Shown: positions 27,343 through 36,776, counted from the stretch's first letter. The stretch: 64,000 bases of DNA from Kudoa neothunni (GCA_964304625.1 OZ199839.1:11430195-11494194); one strand, 5' to 3'. Numbers and translations: made by a program. Notes: a model not told the origin generated them from the letters alone.

Positions 27343-29287
27343 TTAATTTGAATCTGAAATAATTAAATCAGACTCAGATTTTCCACTAACAAATCGTAAT
27401 CTTTCATTTCCCAATGCGATATCTTTTTTCCTTCCTAGCCAGAGAAACATAAAAAATGTTAATACGGCTAAAATAAAAAGCGTAATGCCAACTATTGTAA
27501 TCATGAATGGATTCAAAGTCGAACCCTTTCCATTATCATTATGTCGTGTAATACTCTCATTGAGGCTATCATTTTCACTTATATTTGTCATATCTTCGAA
27601 TGAATCCGAACTAACTGAGGAAGTGTTTGCTTCAGATGTATCAGATTCGATCTCAGATATGGAAACATTGATCGGAAAACGAGTATTATTCAATGCATAC
27701 CCGTACAACCAACGATCATTCGCAGCCTATGGATTGTTAAGCGAAAAATAGTCTCAACACGTAATGTAACGTATACTTTAATAATAAAGTTTGTTTGATA
27801 GTTTTCCTCGACATACTTCAGATATAACAAATAATAATTTGATATAATGCATTCTGATGAGTATTTTTTTGCGTCTGAATCCTAAGAAAATTAATAGGAA
27901 AATAAAACAAAACAAGATACATTATCGATAAGTATTTTTCGGAATTTAAAACAACTTCTATCTACTTCCTTCTGAAAGTCTTTGACTGACAATGGGAACT
28001 TCATATCTTCTATGTGAACTATTGGGAAATAAGCCTAGTAAACATAATTTACAAAATATTACCAATAACTATAAGGTTACGATGAATTTATTTGCTGGAG
28101 CAACCACCTTCCAAGATATCGACTGAGCAATATTACGGAGATCATTGACTAGGGTGTCATTGCTATTGATAGCACGAGCGATGCCTTGCTTGCAAACTTT
28201 GTCGTCAAAAATATCAACAACCAATGTTGGGTATAGTTTTATATCATCCGCCGAGAAATAAATGCAACCTTTACCATTGAATGATCTCCATATATCTATT
28301 ACGATCCCTGGATTTGAACTGCGGCATTGTTTTAAGTCGCTTAGTTCTTTATATGAAATCACATTCTAAGCGATAGTAGTTATTGCGAGAATTTGCATTA
28401 TCATAAGGTATTACAGATGGATGGTATATCGCTATAGTTGGATTTAATGAAATTGGTGGTCCTGTTTCGACTAGATACAACTTTTCTCTGTTATTCCATG
28501 ATATCATCATTCGATGAGCACCAGTGGGAATATCTATATTATTTGTATCGATGTGACCAACATATATCCCTTGTTCTTCAAACGAAATAAAGCCATCATA
28601 CTTATTTTCCAATATCTAAATGATTTAATGACCAAGTTTATAAAATATTGAAATGAGGAATTACAGGATGTGATCGAAAGTAAAGAAGTCTACATGCGAT
28701 TTTATCTTTTCTATCTAAGAGATTAAAGAAGCCTCGGTTTTCGATTATGGAATATTCGCCAAAATTATCATTTAAATTTTTCACGGTGTCCGTATAATTC
28801 AGTGGAAATATTTCTCTATGGGGAAAATAAATATAGAGATGTCATATTCGAATGTGCCACTTGAACTTTTCCCATGCAGTTTCGCCGATAAATTCAATAT
28901 GGATTTCAAGAAGGCCTTGATTTTCGAATAACTTTTTCATATTTGAAATGCATGAGGATAGACTCAAATGGCTAACTTTCCAATTTTCTTGGTCGAGCAA
29001 ATCTACGCAAGATAATAAACAGTTTATAACGTTACACTTTTTACTTTTATTCCAGCAAAGTTCGTGATGAAGCATTCGTAATCTGGGAAACTCACTAGTA
29101 GCGTTTATTTCGTAGATGTAGACCTTCATACCTTCCTCAGTTTCGTGTATCAAAGCTCCATACTATTGTTAATAAATTCAGTTTAGCTTGTAGTAATATG
29201 TCATACCTTAGGAGATGTAATTTTTATTGCGTTCCCAACAAAATAAGTCAATAGAAATGAAAAAAGCAGATTCATAATGGGATACAT
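27343..29287 (-). CDS. Catalytically degenerate CD39/GDA1 NTPDase-like type I membrane protein, paralogue A (8 exons)
   Basis: Signal peptide MYPIMNLLFSFLLTYFVGNA. Segments collinear with CD39: YGALIHETEEGMKVYIYE, EFIGETAWEKF, YDGFISFEEQGIYV, KKYSSECIISNYYLLYL, NFIIK, DRWLYGYALN. Then an S/T/acidic stalk, a TM helix (FMITIVGITLFILAVLTFFMFLWL) and a short tail. All introns are GT-AG and the frame is intact. Confidence 0.75.
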
Positions 29288-30234
29288 AAAATTGGGCGGT
29301 CTTATCTATAAACCGATTTTGTGTGTTGTCGGAATTTTATTTTAATAACATAATTTACTTACTGGCATAGTAGAGAGGGAATCAGAAGAATGTGGCGTGA
29401 CCCACCTCATCTATCTTACAAAAAGAATAGTTTCTGTGGGTTTATATTACTCCTAAAATAAATAAATATTCCATATAATTATACAAAATTTTTAAATGTT
29501 ACAAAACTTCCGTATAATTTTGCCTTAACCGGTAATTTTTTAATCTGTATATATTTAAATCAAAATAATTTTCTCATAAATTCAATCGATTTTTTAAAAA
29601 CTACAACAATTTTGGAATTGTTTTGAAGCTATTCCACAATTTTGTCGAGACTTTTGACAAATGTCTTAAAAATAATAGCCGTTTTATTACATATTATCAT
29701 AGACATATTTAATCATTTTTATATTAAATTATTTTACGTTTAAATTACTTTTCACAAAATAATTAAAGCTCGTTGTGAAGAATAGCCGAAAATTTATGTA
29801 AATATTAATTCGCTTATAATTTTTTTATTTTTTACTTAATTCGTAAAATGAAACCTAAAATTATTTATCGTTCTTTTCCTACAATGACAAAAAATCTTTA
29901 TATAATAAATATTTATTTTTAATAATTAAGATGTACGTAAATAGACAAAGCAACTGAGGACAATATTTGATCACCTATGTGGCTTAATAATTGGCGGTTT
30001 AAACCTATATATAATGACTTTAGATATTTAAACAGGCGCAATTTCTAACGTTAGAAAACTTGATGAAACTTCAATCTAATATTCGTAATAGATATGGGTT
30101 ACAAGGAAAAAAATCAAACAGGCTGATCATCTTATTTTTATTTATTTATTAGTTTTGATGTATAGTTATTTTTAATTTAATTTATATATTGTTATAGATT
30201 TCTAATATAGCAATATTTTATATCTTGTTCATTC

Positions 30235-30974
30235 GTAATCATTGTTTTAGATATGGACAAAAGTCTATATTTGCATCATTAATAGCGATTTGGTAAAGAA
30301 TTCTATAATCAGATAGATTTAAGCTCTATAATACAAGCATCATGTCCGTAGATTTCATTGAAATAGTCCGCGATGTTTAACTTTCAGTGATTAAATTCAA
30401 TGCGGATGGTTGTAATCTTATTCCCTCTAATTATATAAATTATTTACGTTGATATTGAAGCGAATTTTAGTTGTTTGGGAAAATTGCATTAATGTTTATG
30501 CCGGGCTAAGCGATGCTAATTTTAGCAATATCAGTTAATTTCCATACGTTTTCTTTTATCTCTATTACTTTTTCTATTTTTTATCTCTTAAGAAGTTAGT
30601 GCTTCACACAGTTCCCGAGCCGGATCTGAAGGAAACTTTCAAAAATCTTCCGCAACGAAAAATATCATTTTAGACAACATTTTAACGGGATTTAAATAAT
30701 TCGGGGACGAAAAAAATAAGACGCTGACCTTAAATTACTTAGGGTTGGTGCTGAGCCACGAAATTTTTGAATAAACGCCGGGATTGGGACACTCCTTCAA
30801 AGAAATGATCATAATTTAAATTTCATAATTCAAATCGTTAAATTTGTTGCTTAAAACTTGTTAGTTATTTTATTTCTATGGGTTAATTCGATATTTAAAA
30901 ATATTTCTTGAATGCTATTAAAAAACGTCTCTAGGTGAAATCTTCCCCAAGCAACGTTGGGTAGTTCGTGCTAG
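30235..30974 (+). mobile_element. Second, 5'-truncated copy of the Helitron at 25598-26643, in the opposite orientation
   Basis: Ends CCCCAAGCAACGTTGGGTAGTTCGTGCTAG|T. Colinear reverse-complement similarity to 25598-26240. Confidence 0.8.
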
Positions 30975-31050
30975 TTTTTATTAAATACACACAATAAGTA
31001 TAACAACTAGACGGATTAAAAGAATATAACTGTTTAAAAAATTAATAAGT

Positions 31051-32818
31051 CCTGGGGTCAAAAATGACTCCAGTTAGTTCCTCGCGGAAGTTTTTTTATG
31101 TCGGTCCTTCGAGGGTTAATCGTCGAATTTATAAAAAACGACGTTTATTTTCTTCCGGACTTATAGGTTTTTACGACATTTAAACATATGGCGAGAAAAC
31201 AAAGACAATCGGTTAGTTTTTTGGACGAATAATCTTTTCTTGGAATAATTGACAACGTTTTGGTGTGCAAATACTCCAAAGTTAATCCTCCAACACTACG
31301 GAATAGAATACAGGAGTATTCAGTTTCAAAAAAACATAATTCATTGATTAATTTGTCAAAATATACTTCTCCATTACATAATTCTTTTTATAGAGATTGA
31401 AATAACGATGAGATGGAAGTCGATTTAGTTTCGATGGTAATTTGTGGTGTACTACCTTTAAATCCACTGCAAGGCATATTCCTCTGCGTAACTATATTAC
31501 AAAATACTGTCCTATCGCGCGATCTTTACCTGATGGTAGACTACTAATTGACAAAAATGTTGAAGCATTGACGCTTATACGGAGCAAAGTATAATTAAAA
31601 CCAACATTACTATTTGTGTACTCTTTAAAATTTTTCAATGTTTTTATCTATTTTCATAAATTTTTGTACAGTATGTAATAATAAAATTCGGGGGAAATGA
31701 CCACAATAATAGTACGGAAAAAAGTTTTATCTTCGGAGGACTTTTAGGGTCAAATTGACCCCAAGTTTTTATTTTACGATTATACTATAAAAATTTGTTA
31801 AAAAGTAAACAAGTGATGTTTCATGAATTCTATCGACGAATTCTTTGGTAAAATGGTGATTAATATATCACTTAATCTGTGTTAATACTTTACTAATAAT
31901 CTCGGATCCTGTTCACAAATGATCGTATGAAGAATAACACTTCGCGTTGATTGTTTTAGTTGATAGGTTGAATATTATATATCCCTCACGCAAAAAAAGT
32001 TTATATAAATTTTTAAAAATTTGATCCGAATCATCTAATTATTTGAACAATTCTTACATTTCTTCGATAAATGAACTGAGCAGTAGTGTTTATTGCAATA
32101 TGAGCATGTGATTTGAGTTTTTTTATCAATTCCTCGAGGACAATATCCACATCGACGTCTTTTGGCTGTTCGTAAACTGTTAGTCTGGGCCATAGATAGG
32201 GTGATTTTGTTTTGACAATTTCCCTTTCTGTGGATTTCGACCCATGAGAGGTCGATAGAGAACTTGTGCGATTTCCTGTAAAAATATTTTAGTTTTGTTG
32301 TTTCGATGAATTAACTGAGATGAGAGTATAAGTGTATTTTTAAAATGATTTTAAAGGGAATTTTTAAGTCAAAATATTTGTGTAACCTGACAAAGGCGGG
32401 GTTTCGCGCTAGATTAGGATAAAAAACAAAACTGAAAAAGTATTAGAGACTAAGAGAAAATAAATAATTATTGTTATTTTTGGTTATGTATTAAATTATT
32501 GTTTATAGAAAATTGGAATAAAAATACTTTCCAAGAAAAAGACTCAAAATTATTTTTTTAAGCAATAAATTAGCTATTAAACAGTGGCTTACATTTTACG
32601 ATCATTCCCTAACGGCATACGAATAATTACGTAAAAGAGTTAATTAGATTAATTGTTATATTTCACATTGTTTTACTGGAAAACTAGTCGATAGAAATCG
32701 AAAATATCAGAAAATTGAATAGGTAACAATTTTTAGAATTAGTTTATCAAATAATAATCTGGGGTCAAATTGACCCCAAAGGACCTCCGAAATTTGTTTT
32801 TGTAGCGACTTTAGAAGG
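31051..32818 (-). mobile_element. Decayed/nested piggyBac-type element(s)
   Basis: Palindrome GGGGTCAAATTGACCCC at about 31053, 31747 and 32761. Ends ...GAGGG|TTAA (31115) and ...GAAGG|TTAA (32818). Weak transposase-like traces at 31120-31600. Confidence 0.6.
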
Positions 32819-32829
32819 TTAATGATTGA

Positions 32830-34265
32830 CGAGTCCCCAGGTTTCAAAAATCTGCCAATGGTCCATACTTTATTGTGCGTCTGTGATCACTCATTGGATA
32901 AAAAAGCGTCTTTATGTTCGATTACACGATTGTACATGAATGTAACTCAGTGATTATTTCCAACCATATTTCTCCCAGTTGATTCATCTTTCAAATCAAA
33001 AAACTATCAGACATATTTCCTCATGTAAGATTTTTTTTGCACGAAATTTTCGGCACTTCTTTCAATAAACCGGCGTGCTAGCTAGGAAGGTTGTTATGTA
33101 TCATCTAGCAAAACATGATATTGAATGTTTAAAAGAAATACCCTGTAGAAATGATTGCAGATAGTATTATAGTCTCTATAATTGTGTTAATGAAATATTG
33201 AATTATATCCCTATTGATATTGACTTCTTGGTTGATAATGAAATTGATCTAAACGTTTCTTCACCCAAAGAATTCTTTATTTATTTTAAAATCATTGTCG
33301 TAACATAAAGTCCAATTAACAAATTTTCAAAGTTTATTGAATGGATATCATCAACGTTCCGAATTGATAAAACTTCAATAATATTGTCTCAAGATCAAAC
33401 CCTATCTGAATGGAATTTTAAGGAGAGAGAAGCAAACAAACTTACGTTGAATTTGCATATTGATAAATTAATATTGAATCTCAATGGGATAATATGTAAA
33501 AAACCGTACGATTGTTTCCCTTCTTCAACATTGATGGAGACTGTCAAGAACCTTGGTACCACCAAAAATATGAATTTCAAATCAATAAATATATCTGATA
33601 TTGCAAAATTCTTAAGTCTAGAACCAACAAAATTTAATAAAAGTTCAACTTCAATTATTATCCTCCTTAAATGAAATAGATGTGGATGGTGATTCACCCA
33701 CCCTTTTGGATCAACAAGAGAAGATTAGTCCTAATATTATCAAAAATAGCTCTGGATCTTTTATCAATTCCTATTTCTTCAATCGCCGTTGAAGGAAGCT
33801 TTTCAGAAATGAGGCATTTATTCACACCATATAAATTTTCACTTTCAAAAGAAAGGTGCTCAATGATCATGCAGCTATATTACAATGGAGACATTAAATA
33901 TTAATAATTAATATAATGATTCGTATTTTATTTCTTATTTTAGGTTTTAAATAACATTTTATTTAATTATATAATTATATTATTTTCTATCAGAGTTATT
34001 AATTTTCGTTATAAAAAAATATTTTTGATATTTGTCTAACTAAAGGTGGATTTTTTTAATAAGTATACATTGAAATAAATGATATACACCATTTACGTAA
34101 TTTTAAATGGTACAATTTTGATAATCAATTAATTTGTACTCTAGATGTGCGTACTTTTCAACAAACCTCCAAATGGTCGCATTAATCTTTTTTATGGGGA
34201 AAACGTCGATTTCAATCGAAGTTTTTTGTGAAAACTAACTAACGTCGAAAATCACACGCCCTAAT
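32830..34265 (+). mobile_element. Decayed hAT transposon remnant
   Basis: hAT C-terminal dimerisation motif FW...LSKIALDLLSIPISSIAVEGSFS at 33680-33904. BED-finger-like trace (GTS..NR) near 33050. Possible right end ...CACACGCCCTA at about 34263. Confidence 0.65.
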
Positions 34266-34797
34266 CATAAATTAAATTATGGACTGAGATTAATAATGAA
34301 CTCAAGAGTACTTTACGAGTTACACAAATATCGAGAGAGTCGTCTATTTTGTCACCCTAATAGTTTGAAATCCTAGGTTGCCAGAGTGAAAGATGGTGAA
34401 TGATATTAAAATAGAGCAAATAATTTCAATGAGGAATAAAACTAATAAATTTCACATGGGATTGTATCATATTTTTTTTATAATTTCTCAAGCTTATTCT
34501 ATTTCTAATAATTATTTCATAATGTGAAAATTATTCATGAAAAAGGTCAAGACTTCTAGATTTCATGACTCAGTGATATGAGACTCCGAAGGGGGTAATA
34601 AACGAAATCTCGACAAATTTTCTCCTTTATTAAAAAACCTGCAAAGTTGGCTTGAATTATAAAAAGAAATATGTATCTGAATGAAAATCCTTCAAATAAA
34701 TAGATATATATATAATGCGTAAAAAAATCAGATCAGATAAATCATCAAAAATATTAAGTATAGTTTGGAGAAAAATCTAGGAGTGATTAGTTCCACT

Positions 34798-36776
34798 CTA
34801 TTTATCTGACCCTATTGAAGGGTACTGAGGTTGATTCTCAATCACACGGAATTTTTTGTTTGTTGAATTATTTCTTCGCTGTACTTGCCAAATCAGGACA
34901 ACTACTACAACCACCAAGATTATCAACAATACTACTGCCACAGAGATTCCAGCGATGCAATAGCTTGAAATTGATTTTCTCTTCTTAACCTTGGTGGTGA
35001 CTGTGTCGTAGATATTATTTAAATTGGTTAATACATGTGTTATGGATGGTTCAACTGTGCTTATATCAGGGTCTTCATTTGGTGGGGTAATAGTTTTGGA
35101 TGATTCAATCGTACTTATACTAGTTTCTTCATCAGATGGATCAGCGGTTGTGGAGACAGAAACAGTAGCTGCAAGTGGAAACCGAGGGTCAGTTTTTGCA
35201 TAACCCTCCAGGAAATATTCCTTTGACGCCTAAATATATGAAGTAGGACTAAATCAAATATGCCGCTAATAGGACTTCTTCAATGGTAAAATTAGTTTTA
35301 TATTTTTCTTTGACAAATTTCAAATATAGCAAATAATGATTAGATAAAATGCATTCAACTCGGTATTTATGATAATCATCATCCTATGGGCATATATTTA
35401 TAATAGAAATAACAATAATAAAGTGCTGACTGGGTTTTTCAAATAGGAGAGGCATTTTGAATCGACAATACCTTGAAATTCGTCAATTGTCAAAGGAAAT
35501 GTGACTTCACTTGTATCCATAATTGGGAAATAAGCCTAAATATTCAAGTCACCCTAAATAATAACCACTACAGGGTTACTATCAATTTCAGATTGTTAGA
35601 AACCACCTTCCAAGTGATATCCTTAGGGACATGGCATAATCCATTAACAAAGCGATCCACGTTATTGATAACTTTCACTATGGTATTTTTGCACAATTCG
35701 CCGTCAAAATTATCGTAAGTATAACGTGGATATAGCTTTACGTAATCATTTGTAAGATAAACACAATCTTCATCTTGAAACTGGCGCCAAAAATCCAAAA
35801 CAACTCCTGGATCATAGCATAGACATGTCGACCCAATATTATCCACAGTTAGTATGTCAGAAGTCTAATAAATTGTGAAATTTTTTATATATTTAGGATA
35901 ATTATTTTACATCTGGATTTAAAAGTTGATAAGCTGGATTCTGGTTCAGTGCGGGTCCCGCCTCGCCAAGATATGTCTTGTTTGACTCTTTCGAAGAAAT
36001 CAATAATTTCTTCGCTAAAGCAGGGAATTCGTTGTAATTTTTATCCAAGTAGCCCGTCAAAACTTCATTTTTATCAAACATAATAAATCCATCATATGTA
36101 TCTTTTAAATTCTAAAAAATTGGAATCAACAAATAAAAACTCTTTAGTAGGAAAACACACAGGCTGAAACTGAATATAATTAAGTGTGTATGCTATTTTA
36201 TCTTTCCATTCTAAGACAGTAAAAAATTGTCGATTAGCAATTTTCACATATTTTTCATTATCATCGTTCAACGTAAATTGAGGATAGAGAAAATTCACAT
36301 TTTCCTTTCTATATGAGATTTATGGGTACAAACTAGTATATTAGGGTATTTACGCGAATTTTTGCCAAGCGCTCTCTCCAAAAAATTCGATATGTAATTT
36401 AGTTTCGTCGATTTCCCCCAAAAGTCTCTTTATTTTTGAAATACACGTTTGCAACGCCAAATAACTAACTTGAAAAGTTTTGCTATTAAGAATATCTAAA
36501 ATCAATGATAAAACAATAGTACATTCACTATAGGTACTTTTGGTACAGCAAACCTCATGAAATTGTTTTTGAAGCGTAGGGGGTTCGGCCAAAGTATCAA
36601 TATCATATATATACGCTTTTAACCCTTCCGGAGTTTCGTGGATCAATGCTCCATACTAGTTTTATAATATTTTACTTAAAGGGACCAACGCTGGAAAATA
36701 TTACGTATATTTCGCTTTTAGAGTATCCATAATAGTAAGCAATCCAAAGCAACGCCACTATTCTCATTGGGTACAT
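34798..36776 (-). CDS. Catalytically degenerate CD39/GDA1 NTPDase-like type I membrane protein, paralogue B (8 exons)
   Basis: Signal peptide MYPMRIVALLWIAYYYGYS. Segments YGALIHETPEGLKAYIYD, EFFGESAWQKF, TVLEWKDKIAYTLNY, YDGFIMFDKNEVL, CLCYDPG, HKYRVECILSNHYLLYL, YFLEGYAK. Then an S/T/P-rich stalk, a TM helix (IAGISVAVVLLIILVVVVVVLIW) and a tail ending QYPSIGSDK*. Intron positions match paralogue A. Confidence 0.75.

What the first reader, a model, noticed from the sequence alone, without database searches (positions are those of the whole stretch)
27343..36776. Pair of intact pseudo-apyrases: CD39/NTPDase scaffold with the catalytic motifs ACR1-ACR4 replaced
Seen in sequence: two same-strand 8-exon genes with matching intron positions, open frames and clearly diverged sequences. 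The ORF track shows them only as anonymous fragments. Established knowledge: CD39 has ACR1 YGIVLDAGSSHT, ACR2 LGATAGMR, ACR3 ITGQEEGAYGWITINY, ACR4 GALDLGGASTQ and ACR5 GWTLGYMLN, plus PCFHPG and KYLSEYCFSGTYIL. In the same order these genes read YGALIHETEEG/YGALIHETPEG, FIGETAWEK/FFGESAWQK, LLDRKDKIACRLLY/VLEWKDKIAYTLNY, GFISFEEQG/GFIMFDKNE, CRSSNPG/CLCYDPG, KYSSECIISNYYL/KYRVECILSNHYL and RWLYGYALN/FLEGYAK. Both DXG phosphate-binding loops and the ACR3 catalytic Glu are lost, while scaffold residues and cysteines persist. The replacement motifs (HETxEG, GE[T/S]AW, KDKIA) are conserved between the paralogues. Inference: a lineage-specific family of non-catalytic NTPDase-fold surface proteins selected for a new function, such as receptor, adhesin, nucleotide sink or immune decoy. 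I do not know of a described family like this.
Basis: partly seen in the sequence, partly recalled or inferred. Interest (0 to 1): 0.88.

Follow-up and report, generated by a model that had tools for sequence, protein, structure and literature searches.

The report
Dead apyrase-derived surface proteins, myxozoan parasite
Two neighbouring intact genes of a fish-muscle parasite (probably Kudoa neothunni) encode membrane-anchored surface proteins that seem to descend from an ATP-degrading enzyme (CD39/apyrase type), have lost its phosphate-binding loops, and belong to a family of about 20 copies whose function is unknown.

Summary
Two same-strand 8-exon genes lie at 27343-29287 (540 codons) and 34798-36776 (550 codons). 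They share seven intron sites and phases, have short GT-AG introns, and are 38.5% identical in protein. Each encodes a signal peptide, a Cys-containing ectodomain, an acidic Ser/Thr-rich stalk, a transmembrane helix and a short tail.

They belong to a family of about 20 copies in three clusters of a 40.26-Mb genome that fits Kudoa neothunni.

NTPDase ancestry is supported, but only indirectly:
- Pfam GDA1_CD39 finds nothing, exon by exon.
- The exon-2 family profile aligns to NTPDases from ACR1 through ACR2 (hhalign E 0.011 to 4e-5; no shuffle reaches the score).
- The AlphaFold model of exon 2 is a beta-beta-beta-alpha-beta unit. Its best Foldseek and Atlas matches are NTPDases and Ppx/GppA, at weak scores.
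- The genes share intron phases and several exact intron sites with a divergent, motif-intact, type I-anchored NTPDase gene elsewhere in the genome, including a 285-nt exon of the same length.

Both DXG loops are gone, so apyrase activity is unlikely. The pair's "replacement motifs" are not conserved across the family, which argues against a new common active site.

There is no RNA evidence. The spliced protein was not joined or folded (operator rule). First readers flagged similar loci elsewhere in this genome; none had been followed up.

The parts
29207..29287 (-). Gene A exon 1: start codon and signal peptide (begins MYP, then a hydrophobic stretch)
   Evidence: Open frame and GT donor at 29206; the MYP start is shared with gene B
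28861..29162 (-). Gene A exon 2 (302 nt): N-terminal beta-beta-beta-alpha-beta unit. Equivalent of NTPDase ACR1 (YGALIHETEEG) through ACR2 (IHIEFIGETAWEKF), with two family-invariant Cys
   Evidence: hhalign to NTPDases at E 0.011 / 1e-3 / 4e-5; AF2 pLDDT 69; Foldseek and Atlas
28665..28815 (-). Gene A exon 3 (151 nt): ACR3-equivalent strand (FFNLLDRKDKIACRLLY), with Lys where NTPDases have the catalytic Glu
   Evidence: The best cell for this exon in the exon-by-exon hhalign matrix is the ACR3 exon of L020/L021, E 0.0068, in register
28415..28615 (-). Gene A exon 4 (201 nt): ACR4-equivalent hairpin (YDGFISFEEQG), DXGG lost
   Evidence: Family-conserved D-G-F; the phase-0 intron before it sits at the same site as in L020/L021; no profile signal
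28081..28365 (-). Gene A exon 5 (285 nt): Cys-rich part of the second lobe; lacks the 4th family Cys
   Evidence: Same 285-nt length as gene B and as exon x6 of L020; AF2 of the gene B copy has pLDDT 70.5 with no fold match
27921..28034 (-). Gene A exon 6 (114 nt): AYFP... with a conserved Cys
27777..27881 (-). Gene A exon 7 (105 nt): KYSSECIISNYYLLYL helix
   Evidence: family-invariant C, Y, Y and L
27343..27726 (-). Gene A exon 8: RWLYGYALNNTRF motif, acidic Ser/Thr/Asn-rich stalk, transmembrane helix, basic cytoplasmic tail, stop
   Evidence: aligns in register with WTLGKML of L020 (E 0.074)
36705..36776 (-). Gene B exon 1: start codon and signal peptide
36354..36655 (-). Gene B exon 2 (302 nt): YGALIHETPEG ... 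HIEFFGESAWQKF
36161..36308 (-). Gene B exon 3 (148 nt): FFTVLEWKDKIAYTLNY
35911..36111 (-). Gene B exon 4 (201 nt): YDGFIMFDKNE
35580..35864 (-). Gene B exon 5 (285 nt): four family-conserved Cys plus one extra
35431..35535 (-). Gene B exon 6 (105 nt)
35276..35383 (-). Gene B exon 7 (108 nt): KYRVECILSNHYLLYL
34798..35229 (-). Gene B exon 8: YFLEGYAKTDPRF, Ser/Thr/Pro/Asp/Glu-rich stalk, transmembrane helix, basic tail, stop. The TM region alone gives a Pfam Stevor hit just above threshold
29288..34797 (.). Spacer between the two paralogues; holds a hAT transposase dimerisation-domain remnant (33680-33901, + strand) and no further family member

Best explanation
**What it is.** Genes A and B are tandem paralogues of a family of about 20 copies, known so far only from this genome and one unidentified public sequencing run. 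They encode type I membrane glycoprotein-like proteins.

**Origin (inferred).** The ectodomain descends from a membrane-anchored NTPDase of the GDA1/CD39 family, like the two motif-intact genes at C1:884-886 kb and C3:5317-5319 kb of the same genome. After duplication the two glycine-rich DXG phosphate-binding loops (ACR1, ACR4) and the ACR2 loop were replaced by charged, variable sequence. In A and B the ACR3 catalytic Glu also became Lys. The core strands, four cysteine pairs and the C-terminal W-x-x-G-Y-A helix were kept.

**Likely mechanism (inferred).** The protein no longer hydrolyses nucleotides. It is displayed on a Ser/Thr-rich stalk at the parasite surface as a stable two-lobed scaffold. 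Its former active-site loops have become variable surface loops. It would then act as a binding or coat protein at the host-parasite interface, not as a conserved nucleotide sink.

**Shown:** gene structure, family size, architecture, similarity of exon 2 to NTPDases, and loss of the motifs.
**Inferred:** the whole-domain fold, lack of activity, surface location and role.
For: - Gene models and intactness.
- Family of about 20 copies in three clusters, all with the same exon order. A relative occurs in an independent run (L019).
- Exon-2 family profile against 27 NTPDases gives one alignment spanning ACR1 to ACR2. It scores E 0.011; E 1e-3 with 0/40 column shuffles reaching it; and E 4e-5, probability 70%, 0/30 shuffles, when exon fragments of L020/L021 are added.
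- The family exon-2 HMM's top hit among the gene-strand frames of L020, L021 and L016 is in each case the ACR2 or ACR1 exon.
- In the exon-by-exon hhalign matrix against L020/L021, the two best cells are e2-ACR2 exon (E 0.0015) and e3-ACR3 exon (E 0.0068). The e8-last exon cell is also a row maximum. All three are in register.
- The AF2 model of exon 2 (pLDDT 69) is beta-beta-beta-alpha-beta. The top Foldseek PDB hits are Legionella NTPDase1, then Ppx/GppA, RuvC and CD39 (E about 0.05). In the ESM Atlas, the row with the highest TM-by-query (0.61) is a GDA1_CD39 cluster.
- L020/L021 are NTPDase homologues. Their exons hit PF01150 at 18.7 and 12.1 bits. Their ACR1 exon, in a three-row profile that also holds the bona fide NTPDase gene of L015, hits NTPDase structures at E 1.4e-4. 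The ACR4 exon of L021 finds only NTPDases in its ten best PDB hits, at weak E-values of 0.24-0.62.
- L020 and the family share the same architecture (signal peptide, C-terminal TM) and intron phases 0,[1],2,0,0,0,0,0. Four intron sites match exactly: before [YF]G; 8 residues after the G of FIG; 5 residues after the ACR3 Tyr; and 5 residues before the C-terminal Trp. A fifth site, before the Cys-rich exon, matches to within one residue. They also share a 285-nt exon of equal length.
- ACR loops are variable across paralogues, while core residues and Cys are conserved.
Against: - No exon reaches Pfam GDA1_CD39 even at E 10. The six-frame PF01150 scan of the genome does not pick up the family.
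- Profiles of exons 2 and 5 and of exons 7 and 8 find no NTPDase in PDB sequences.
- hhalign of exons 3-8 against plant and bacterial NTPDases is not clearly above shuffles.
- The exon-5 model matches nothing.
- Language-model features give no signal.
- There is no expression evidence.
- The young C3 pair has omega of about 0.5, a weak constraint.
Confidence: 0.68

Rival explanations
1. This is an orphan, lineage-specific surface glycoprotein family unrelated to NTPDases. On this view the N-terminal unit is a generic RNase H-like beta-beta-beta-alpha-beta fold, and the motif echoes are chance or convergence.
Against: The exon-2 alignment covers ACR1 to ACR2 in one piece and beats all shuffles. 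Intron phases, several exact intron sites and exon lengths match a PF01150-positive paralogue with the same membrane topology. Matrix cells e2, e3 and e8 fall on the expected exons.
Confidence: 0.14
2. This is still an enzyme: an NTPDase-fold protein that hydrolyses or binds phosphorylated ligands with a rebuilt site, for example His/Glu residues at the ends of strands beta1 and beta4 holding a metal.
For: His at the ACR1 Asp position in most copies, and a Glu in 17 of 19 copies in the strand before ACR2. Most paralogues keep Glu or Asp at the ACR3 base position.
Against: The glycine-rich loops that hold the phosphates through backbone amides are replaced by acidic, variable sequence. The His is not invariant (Asn and Tyr variants occur). 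A and B have Lys at the ACR3 position. No coordinates were available to check whether these residues meet in space.
Confidence: 0.08
3. The genes are decaying or silent duplicates that only look intact.
For: No RNA reads were laid. Omega is about 0.5 in a young pair of the family. Transposon remnants lie between the genes.
Against: Both frames are open over 540 and 550 codons. All 14 splice sites are intact although synonymous sites are saturated and pN is about half of pS. Core residues and Cys are conserved across about 20 copies. The RNA runs gave no reads at all, so they are no test.
Confidence: 0.05
4. The genes are homologues of Plasmodium STEVOR/RIFIN variant antigens, as automatic annotation would say for gene B.
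For: Pfam Stevor scores 26.7 bits (cut-off 25.4) and RIFIN E 0.0011 on exon 8 of gene B. A preprint reports RIFIN/STEVOR-like expansions in another myxozoan (10.64898/2026.02.11.705288).
Against: The match covers only the transmembrane helix and its flanks (profile positions 205-267 of 275). It sits among hits to many unrelated TM families. Gene A has no such hit. Nothing in exons 1-7 matches.
Confidence: 0.02

Closest known systems
Cell-surface and secreted NTPDases of the GDA1/CD39 family (Pfam PF01150; e.g. rat NTPDase1 3zx3, Legionella NTPDase1 4br*)
   Same: The N-terminal unit aligns from ACR1 to ACR2. The predicted beta-beta-beta-alpha-beta unit has NTPDases as its best Foldseek and Atlas matches. 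The order of ACR-equivalent segments is collinear, cysteines are conserved, and a C-terminal W-x-x-G motif lies just before the membrane anchor.
   Different: No Pfam match. Both DXG phosphate loops and the ATAG loop are replaced. A and B have Lys at the ACR3 Glu position. The genes have a signal peptide plus one C-terminal TM on a mucin-like stalk, where CD39 has two TMs. The family has expanded to about 20 fast-diverging copies.
The genome's own divergent type I-anchored NTPDase genes (L020 = C1:884-886 kb; L021 = C3:5317.5-5319.3 kb)
   Same: Same topology (signal peptide, C-terminal TM). Same intron phases, several identical intron sites and similar exon lengths, including a 285-nt exon. 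Best profile matches fall on the corresponding exons. These are the likely parent type.
   Different: L020 and L021 keep DxGSTGTR, GTGGLR, the ACR3 Glu, DIGGSSxQ and WTLGKML, and are recognised by PF01150. They have a short or absent stalk and only two copies.
Inactive members of expanded parasite surface-enzyme families (from established knowledge, e.g. the inactive trans-sialidase-like proteins of Trypanosoma cruzi)
   Same: An enzyme scaffold is kept, catalytic residues are lost, and a large tandem family of membrane-anchored surface proteins arises in a parasite.
   Different: Different fold and different parasite group. No evidence here of expression, binding or antigenic variation.
'RIFIN/STEVOR-like' expanded genes reported in Sphaerospora molnari (bioRxiv 10.64898/2026.02.11.705288)
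   Same: An expanded, clustered membrane-protein family in a myxozoan. Gene B would receive the same Pfam label through its TM region.
   Different: The sequences of the S. molnari genes were not available here, so kinship is untested. In this window the Stevor hit is an anchor-only match.

Membership tests
GDA1/CD39 NTPDase (PF01150) | Match to the Pfam GDA1_CD39 model above the gathering score | tested here: not met
   No exon of A or B hits PF01150 at E up to 10. The six-frame scan of the genome finds only L015 and weak ACR1 exons of L015 and L020. The whole spliced protein was not scanned because joining was barred.
GDA1/CD39 NTPDase (PF01150) | ACR1 phosphate-1 loop D-x-G-S-x-G-x-R | tested here: not met
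   A has YGALIHETEEGMK and B has YGALIHETPEGLK. His aligns to the Asp, and the loop is acidic and variable across the family.
GDA1/CD39 NTPDase (PF01150) | ACR2 loop (A/G)-T-A-G-(M/L)-R | tested here: not met
   A has G-E-T-A-W-E and B has G-E-S-A-W-Q. Other copies have G-R-A-A-W-R, aligned to A-T-A-G-M-R.
GDA1/CD39 NTPDase (PF01150) | ACR3 catalytic Glu, three residues before the conserved Tyr/Phe | tested here: not met
   A and B have Lys (KIAC / KIAY). Most paralogues keep Glu or Asp (EATY, EVAY, DAAY).
GDA1/CD39 NTPDase (PF01150) | ACR4 phosphate-2 loop D-x-G-G-x-S-x-Q | tested here: not met
   A has DGFISFEEQG and B has DGFIMFDKNE. There is no Gly-Gly-x-Ser, and no profile signal for exon 4.
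GDA1/CD39 NTPDase (PF01150) | Profile-profile similarity to the family | tested here: inconclusive
   For exon 2 only: E 0.011, 1e-3 and 4e-5. All give the same ACR1-to-ACR2 alignment and stand above all shuffles. hhalign probability is 4-70%. Exons 3-8 are not clearly above shuffles: exon 5 is borderline (4/40 and 0/30 shuffles reach it, E 0.13-0.17).
GDA1/CD39 NTPDase (PF01150) | Two-lobed ASKHA fold | not testable with these tools
   Only single exons could be folded. Exon 2 gives the expected first-lobe unit. Exon 5 alone matches nothing. The joined ectodomain was not built.
GDA1/CD39 NTPDase (PF01150) | Common descent shown by gene structure shared with a recognised family member | tested here: met
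   Intron phases 0,[1],2,0,0,0,0,0, four exact intron sites plus one within a residue, exon lengths within 21 nt and one identical 285-nt exon, all shared with L020, which is PF01150-positive.
GDA1/CD39 NTPDase (PF01150) | Ca/Mg-dependent hydrolysis of nucleoside tri- and diphosphates | not testable with these tools
   A bench assay is needed. From the loss of both DXG loops, inactivity is inferred.
Plasmodium STEVOR/RIFIN (PF17410, PF02009) | Match over the family's variable and conserved N-terminal regions, not only the anchor | tested here: not met
   The hit is confined to the TM helix region of exon 8 in gene B (profile positions 205-267 of 275). Gene A has none, and exons 1-7 have none.

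The most novel reading that the evidence does not exclude
Myxozoans have turned an ecto-NTPDase into a large, fast-diversifying family of non-catalytic surface coat proteins. The former nucleotide-binding loops serve as variable host-facing loops, acting as a variant-antigen or host-ligand system. The 'RIFIN/STEVOR-like' expansions reported in Sphaerospora molnari would then be the same NTPDase-derived family, mislabelled through its membrane anchor.
Probability: 0.2. Interest if true: 0.75.

Novelty: new variant of a known kind. Interest (0 to 1): 0.58.

Why it matters
Myxozoans are economically important fish parasites, and their surface molecules are almost unknown. Most of their genes are orphans that standard annotation cannot place.

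If the reading holds:
- It gives an ancestry and a testable fold to a family of about 20 genes that automatic tools either miss or mislabel as STEVOR.
- It adds the NTPDase fold to the list of enzyme scaffolds that parasites have recycled into non-catalytic surface families. In the papers searched I found no expanded family of non-catalytic NTPDase-fold proteins; the one inactive member found was a truncated ENTPD5 oncoprotein.
- It offers candidate antigens and host-interaction proteins for Kudoa.

It also shows a method. Conserved intron positions can link a fast-evolving family to its parent when sequence profiles barely can.

Tried and rejected
- **Pfam, exon by exon.** Nothing relevant.
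- **Exon-2 profile against 1.84 billion representative proteins.** Only a 61-aa fragment of a relative and one spurious bacterial repeat protein were found, so no full-length database protein was available to fold.
- **PDB sequence searches with exon profiles.** No NTPDase was found.
- **SMN Tudor domain hit.** The exon-5 profile hit this domain at E 0.0039. I treat it as chance. It rests on three Cys, one Trp and one Pro. The AF2 model of exon 5 is mixed alpha/beta with two long helices, not a Tudor barrel. No Tudor structure appears in the fold searches.
- **ESM Atlas feature search of exon 2.** Best score 0.75, no signal.
- **AF2 of exon 5 alone.** No fold match, so this was an uninformative use of the second folding job.
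- **VIA-align re-ranking.** It shows the exon-2 unit is generic RNase H-like, so structure alone does not prove NTPDase ancestry.
- **RNA.** Three metatranscriptome runs and one contig set with the same species label laid no read on gene A, which is no test. Gene B could not be tried because only one call was allowed.
- **Further genome stretches.** Whether that second family bridges to this one is therefore open.
- **Locus at C2:8.35 Mb (L017/L018).** It was flagged earlier as 'pseudo-apyrase'. It showed nothing related to this family in my HMM scans.
- **Joined protein.** The spliced protein was never joined, searched or folded.

Full report
**1. What is there**

The window is AT-rich, about 30% G+C. 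It lies at C2:11430195-11494194 of a 40,260,978-base genome in four contigs.

A splice model using only GT...AG introns of 39-51 nt joins them in frame.
- Gene A runs from 29287 to 27343 and has 540 codons.
- Gene B runs from 36776 to 34798 and has 550 codons.
- The seven introns have the same phases in both genes (0,2,0,0,0,0,0).
- Exons 2, 4 and 5 have identical lengths (302, 201 and 285 nt).

Both proteins start with MYP and a hydrophobic signal-like stretch. Both end with an acidic Ser/Thr/Asn/Pro-rich segment, a hydrophobic helix of about 25 residues, and a short basic tail.

Summed exon by exon, the copies are 38.5% identical in protein, with pN 0.38 and pS 0.70, which is saturated. The introns are no more alike than AT-rich DNA of that length would be. 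Two frames of this length staying open with all splice sites intact at that divergence means both genes are under selection.

I never joined the exons into a protein for any search or fold. All searches were run exon by exon by reference.

**2. The family**

Exon 2 of gene A finds seven further places in the genome. A profile of exon 2 finds 23. I fetched the clusters and scanned them with per-exon HMMs. Complete or nearly complete copies, with the exons in the same order, lie as follows:
- seven copies at C3:8.516-8.548 Mb, minus strand;
- about ten copies at C1:15.849-15.942 Mb, plus strand;
- a fragment at C3:10.37 Mb;
- the two copies in the window.

That is about 20 genes.

Most C3 and C1 copies have one more intron, inside exon 2. 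It is phase 1 and lies three residues after the first conserved Cys.

A young C3 pair is 85% identical, with dN/dS of about 0.5.

Outside this genome, a search of 1.84 billion representative proteins found only a 61-residue fragment. It lies on a 1-kb contig of an independent sequencing run. That contig carries the signal peptide and exons 2-4 of a family member about 50% identical to a C1 copy. So at least one relative exists in another data set.

**3. Which organism**

An earlier follow-up note of this scan calls the genome myxozoan. I did not test that claim myself.

The assembly statistics fit the published Kudoa neothunni assembly: 40.2 Mb, scaffold N50 12.0 Mb, three chromosomes and a circular mitochondrial contig (PMC12239612). 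Here C2 is 12,040,071 bases, and the genome is 40.26 Mb in four contigs. I take this identification as probable, not proven.

**4. Is the ectodomain derived from an NTPDase?**

The direct tests are negative or weak.
- No exon hits Pfam GDA1_CD39 even at E 10.
- A six-frame scan of the genome with PF01150 finds one clear NTPDase gene (L015, C2:7.279 Mb) and a weak ACR1 exon at C1:885.6 kb, but not this family.
- Profiles of exons 2, 5, 7 and 8 find no NTPDase among PDB sequences.

Three lines of indirect evidence agree with NTPDase ancestry.

(a) Profile against profile. I collected 122 NTPDases and kept 27 that are less than 60% identical to each other.
- The shallow exon-2 alignment placed its best local match exactly on the ACR1 hairpin, and 0 of 60 column shuffles reached the score.
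- With the deeper family alignment, the whole exon aligns from ACR1 to ACR2: 84 columns, E 1e-3, 0 of 40 shuffles.
- The session's own hhalign tool gives the same alignment with E 0.011.
- With exon fragments of the two divergent NTPDase genes added to the NTPDase side, it gives E 4e-5 and probability 70%, with 0 of 30 shuffles.
- In that alignment the family's His sits on the ACR1 Asp, and G-R-A-A-W-R sits on A-T-A-G-M-R.
- Exons 3-8 are not clearly above shuffles against these plant and bacterial NTPDases. Exon 5 is borderline: 4 of 40 and 0 of 30 shuffles reach its score, at E 0.13-0.17.

(b) Structure. AlphaFold2 on exon 2 with the family alignment gives beta-beta-beta, a disordered loop, a helix and a strand (pLDDT 69, pTM 0.58).
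- Foldseek against the PDB ranks Legionella NTPDase1 first, followed by Ppx/GppA, RuvC, rat CD39 and glucokinase, but only at E about 0.05.
- In the ESM Atlas, the row with the best TM by query (0.61, 84 residues, rmsd 3.3) is a GDA1_CD39 cluster, next to Ppx-GppA and PilM.
- So the fold fits the first lobe of an ASKHA protein but does not by itself identify an NTPDase.
- Exon 5 folded alone (pLDDT 70.5) matches nothing.

(c) Gene structure shared with a recognised paralogue. The weak PF01150 hit at C1:885.6 kb belongs to a gene, L020, with a paralogue at C3:5.318 Mb, L021.
- Both encode a signal peptide, DxGSTGTR, GTGGLR, an ACR3 with the Glu in place, DIGGSSxQ, a Cys-rich exon, WTLGKML, one C-terminal transmembrane helix and a tail.
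- Their exons hit PF01150 at 18.7 and 12.1 bits.
- The ACR4 exon of L021 has only NTPDases among its ten best PDB hits, at weak E-values of 0.24-0.62.
- The ACR1 exon hits NTPDase structures at E 1.4e-4, in a three-row profile that also holds the ACR1 exon of L015.
- L020 has eight introns with phases 0,1,2,0,0,0,0,0. These are the same as in the C3/C1 copies of the family. A and B lack only the phase-1 intron.

Four intron sites coincide to the residue:
- phase 0, directly before [YF]G of the ACR1 strand;
- phase 2, eight residues from the Gly of F-I-G (ACR2);
- phase 0, five residues after the ACR3 Tyr;
- phase 0, five residues before the C-terminal Trp.

The intron before the Cys-rich exon is within one residue, and that exon is 285 nt in A, B and L020 alike. 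The other exon lengths differ by at most 21 nt.

Further support from the same genes:
- The family's exon-2 HMM has as its best hit, among all frames on the gene strand of L020, L021 and L016, the ACR2 or ACR1 exon each time.
- In a 7 x 8 hhalign matrix of family exons against L020/L021 exons, the two highest cells are e2 against the ACR2 exon (E 0.0015) and e3 against the ACR3 exon (E 0.0068). The cell e8 against the last exon is also the maximum of its row. All three are in register.
- The other four rows do not peak on the expected exon.
- Exon 4 peaks on the ACR1 exon. That may reflect the known internal duplication of the fold, which is an inference.

Taken together, I put descent from a type I-anchored NTPDase at about 0.8-0.85. 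The claim that the whole ectodomain keeps the NTPDase fold follows from this but was not shown.

**5. What has been lost and what is kept**

The motifs in A and B read as follows.
- ACR1: H-E-T-x-E-G in place of D-A-G-S-x-G.
- ACR2: G-E-[TS]-A-W.
- ACR3: Lys three residues before the Tyr/Cys, where L020, L021 and canonical enzymes have the Glu.
- ACR4: D-G-F-I-[SM]-F-[ED], with no Gly-Gly-x-Ser.

Across about 20 copies the residues conserved at 80% or more are the following:
- core hydrophobics;
- Gly2, Tyr15 and Tyr17;
- eight cysteines (two in exon 2, four in exon 5, one each in exons 6 and 7);
- a Glu in the strand before ACR2;
- D-G-F at the start of exon 4;
- the YYLLYL helix;
- W-x-x-G-Y-A-x-x-D-P-R-F.

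The former phosphate loops are variable among paralogues. At ACR1, for example, copies read HESPQG, HRMENT, HESQNR, HQTLTG, HAVSDG and NQEASG. Most paralogues still have Glu or Asp at the ACR3 position.

They do not mark a family-wide site. This argues against a conserved nucleotide sink or a rebuilt common active site. It argues for a scaffold whose old active-site loops are free to vary.

From established knowledge of NTPDases, the two DXG loops hold the phosphates and the ACR3 Glu is the catalytic base. Loss of activity is therefore the expected consequence. That is an inference.

**6. How it most likely works**

*Shown:* a signal peptide-like start, a Cys-containing ectodomain, a low-complexity acidic Ser/Thr-rich stalk, one transmembrane helix and a short basic tail. 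The genes form tandem, fast-diverging arrays.

*Inferred:* a glycosylated, disulfide-stabilised, two-lobed, non-catalytic module held away from the parasite membrane. It would serve as a binding or coat protein at the interface with the host muscle cell or with other parasite cells.

I cannot choose among adhesin, receptor and immune decoy. There is no expression evidence. Three metatranscriptome runs and one contig set with the same species label gave no read on gene A. The tool itself calls that no test, since nothing shows the organism is in these runs.

**7. Comparison with what is known**

The family is not a member of PF01150 by the usual tests, and five defining motifs are not met. It is best described as a pseudoenzyme offshoot of the NTPDase family.

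In the papers searched, none described an expanded family of non-catalytic NTPDase-fold proteins. The one inactive member found was a truncated ENTPD5 oncoprotein. The Kudoa genome paper does not mention apyrases or surface proteins.

A caution for annotators: exon 8 of gene B scores just above the Pfam threshold for Plasmodium STEVOR (26.7 against 25.4 bits). It does so through its transmembrane helix alone, among hits to many unrelated membrane anchors, and gene A has no such hit. A 2026 preprint reports RIFIN/STEVOR-like expansions in the myxozoan Sphaerospora molnari. Whether those genes are relatives of this family is an untested lead.

**8. Verdict**

The genes are real, the family is real, and NTPDase ancestry is likely. 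The genes are probably catalytically dead, and their function is unknown.

The finding is a new variant of a known kind: a parasite surface family built on a disabled enzyme scaffold. First readers of this scan flagged similar 'pseudo-apyrase' loci at seven other places in the same genome, and none had been followed up.

One of those loci (L016) heads a second family of at least 24 loci, with a YG-x-x-I-H start and an NTPDase-like Cys exon.

Noticed in passing
L020:3084-4864 (-) = G000:C1:884084-885864; L021:3583-5397 (-) = G000:C3:5317583-5319397: Two divergent NTPDase genes with a signal peptide, intact ACR1-ACR4 and WTLGKML motifs, and a single C-terminal TM helix (type I topology, unlike CD39). 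They are the likely parent type of the family, and are probably the parasite's real ecto-apyrases.
   Followed up: partly
L016:270-2417 (-) = G000:C2:5182270-5184417, plus 23 further places listed (e.g. C2:11538801 and C2:11578186, 45-85 kb beyond the window's end): A second expanded family of at least 24 loci. It starts YGIVIH-like, has degenerate ACR segments, and has a P-C...C...C...C exon resembling NTPDases. My exon profiles do not detect it. It may bridge NTPDases and the window's family.
   Followed up: partly
window:34801-35229 (-): Exon 8 of gene B passes the Pfam gathering score for Plasmodium STEVOR (26.7 against 25.4 bits) through its TM helix only. This is an annotation trap, and possibly relevant to the RIFIN/STEVOR-like genes reported in Sphaerospora molnari.
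   Followed up: partly
window:33680-33901 (+): A remnant of a hAT transposase C-terminal dimerisation domain (Pfam E 1e-10) lies in the spacer between the two paralogues.
   Followed up: partly
window:16644-17895 (-): piggyBac-type transposase (DDE_Tnp_1_7, E 2e-61) split over two overlapping frames, so probably frameshifted.
   Followed up: partly
window:11654-12214 (+) and window:12709-13158 (+): Two adjacent ORFs with Kunitz/BPTI protease-inhibitor domains. The first has a signal peptide-like start and two Kunitz domains.
   Followed up: partly
L014:4905-8504 (+) = G000:C1:15856905-15860504: In one C1 copy of the family, exons 3 and 4 are 3.6 kb apart instead of about 50 nt. This is either a large insertion in the intron or two partial genes.
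   Followed up: no
L019:1-1024 (Logan contig of SRR33529766): An independent sequencing run holds a family member (signal peptide, split exon 2, exons 3 and 4) about 50% identical to a C1 copy. It is presumably from a related Kudoa species.
   Followed up: partly
L015:6200-6420 = G000:C2:7280200-7280420: A run of N (withheld letters) lies just downstream of the bona fide NTPDase gene. I did not work on it.
   Followed up: no
window:28081-28365 (-): Gene A has Arg where gene B and 15 of 17 aligned family members have the fourth conserved Cys of exon 5. One disulfide partner is therefore left unpaired, or is paired with one of A's extra cysteines in exons 2-3.
   Followed up: no
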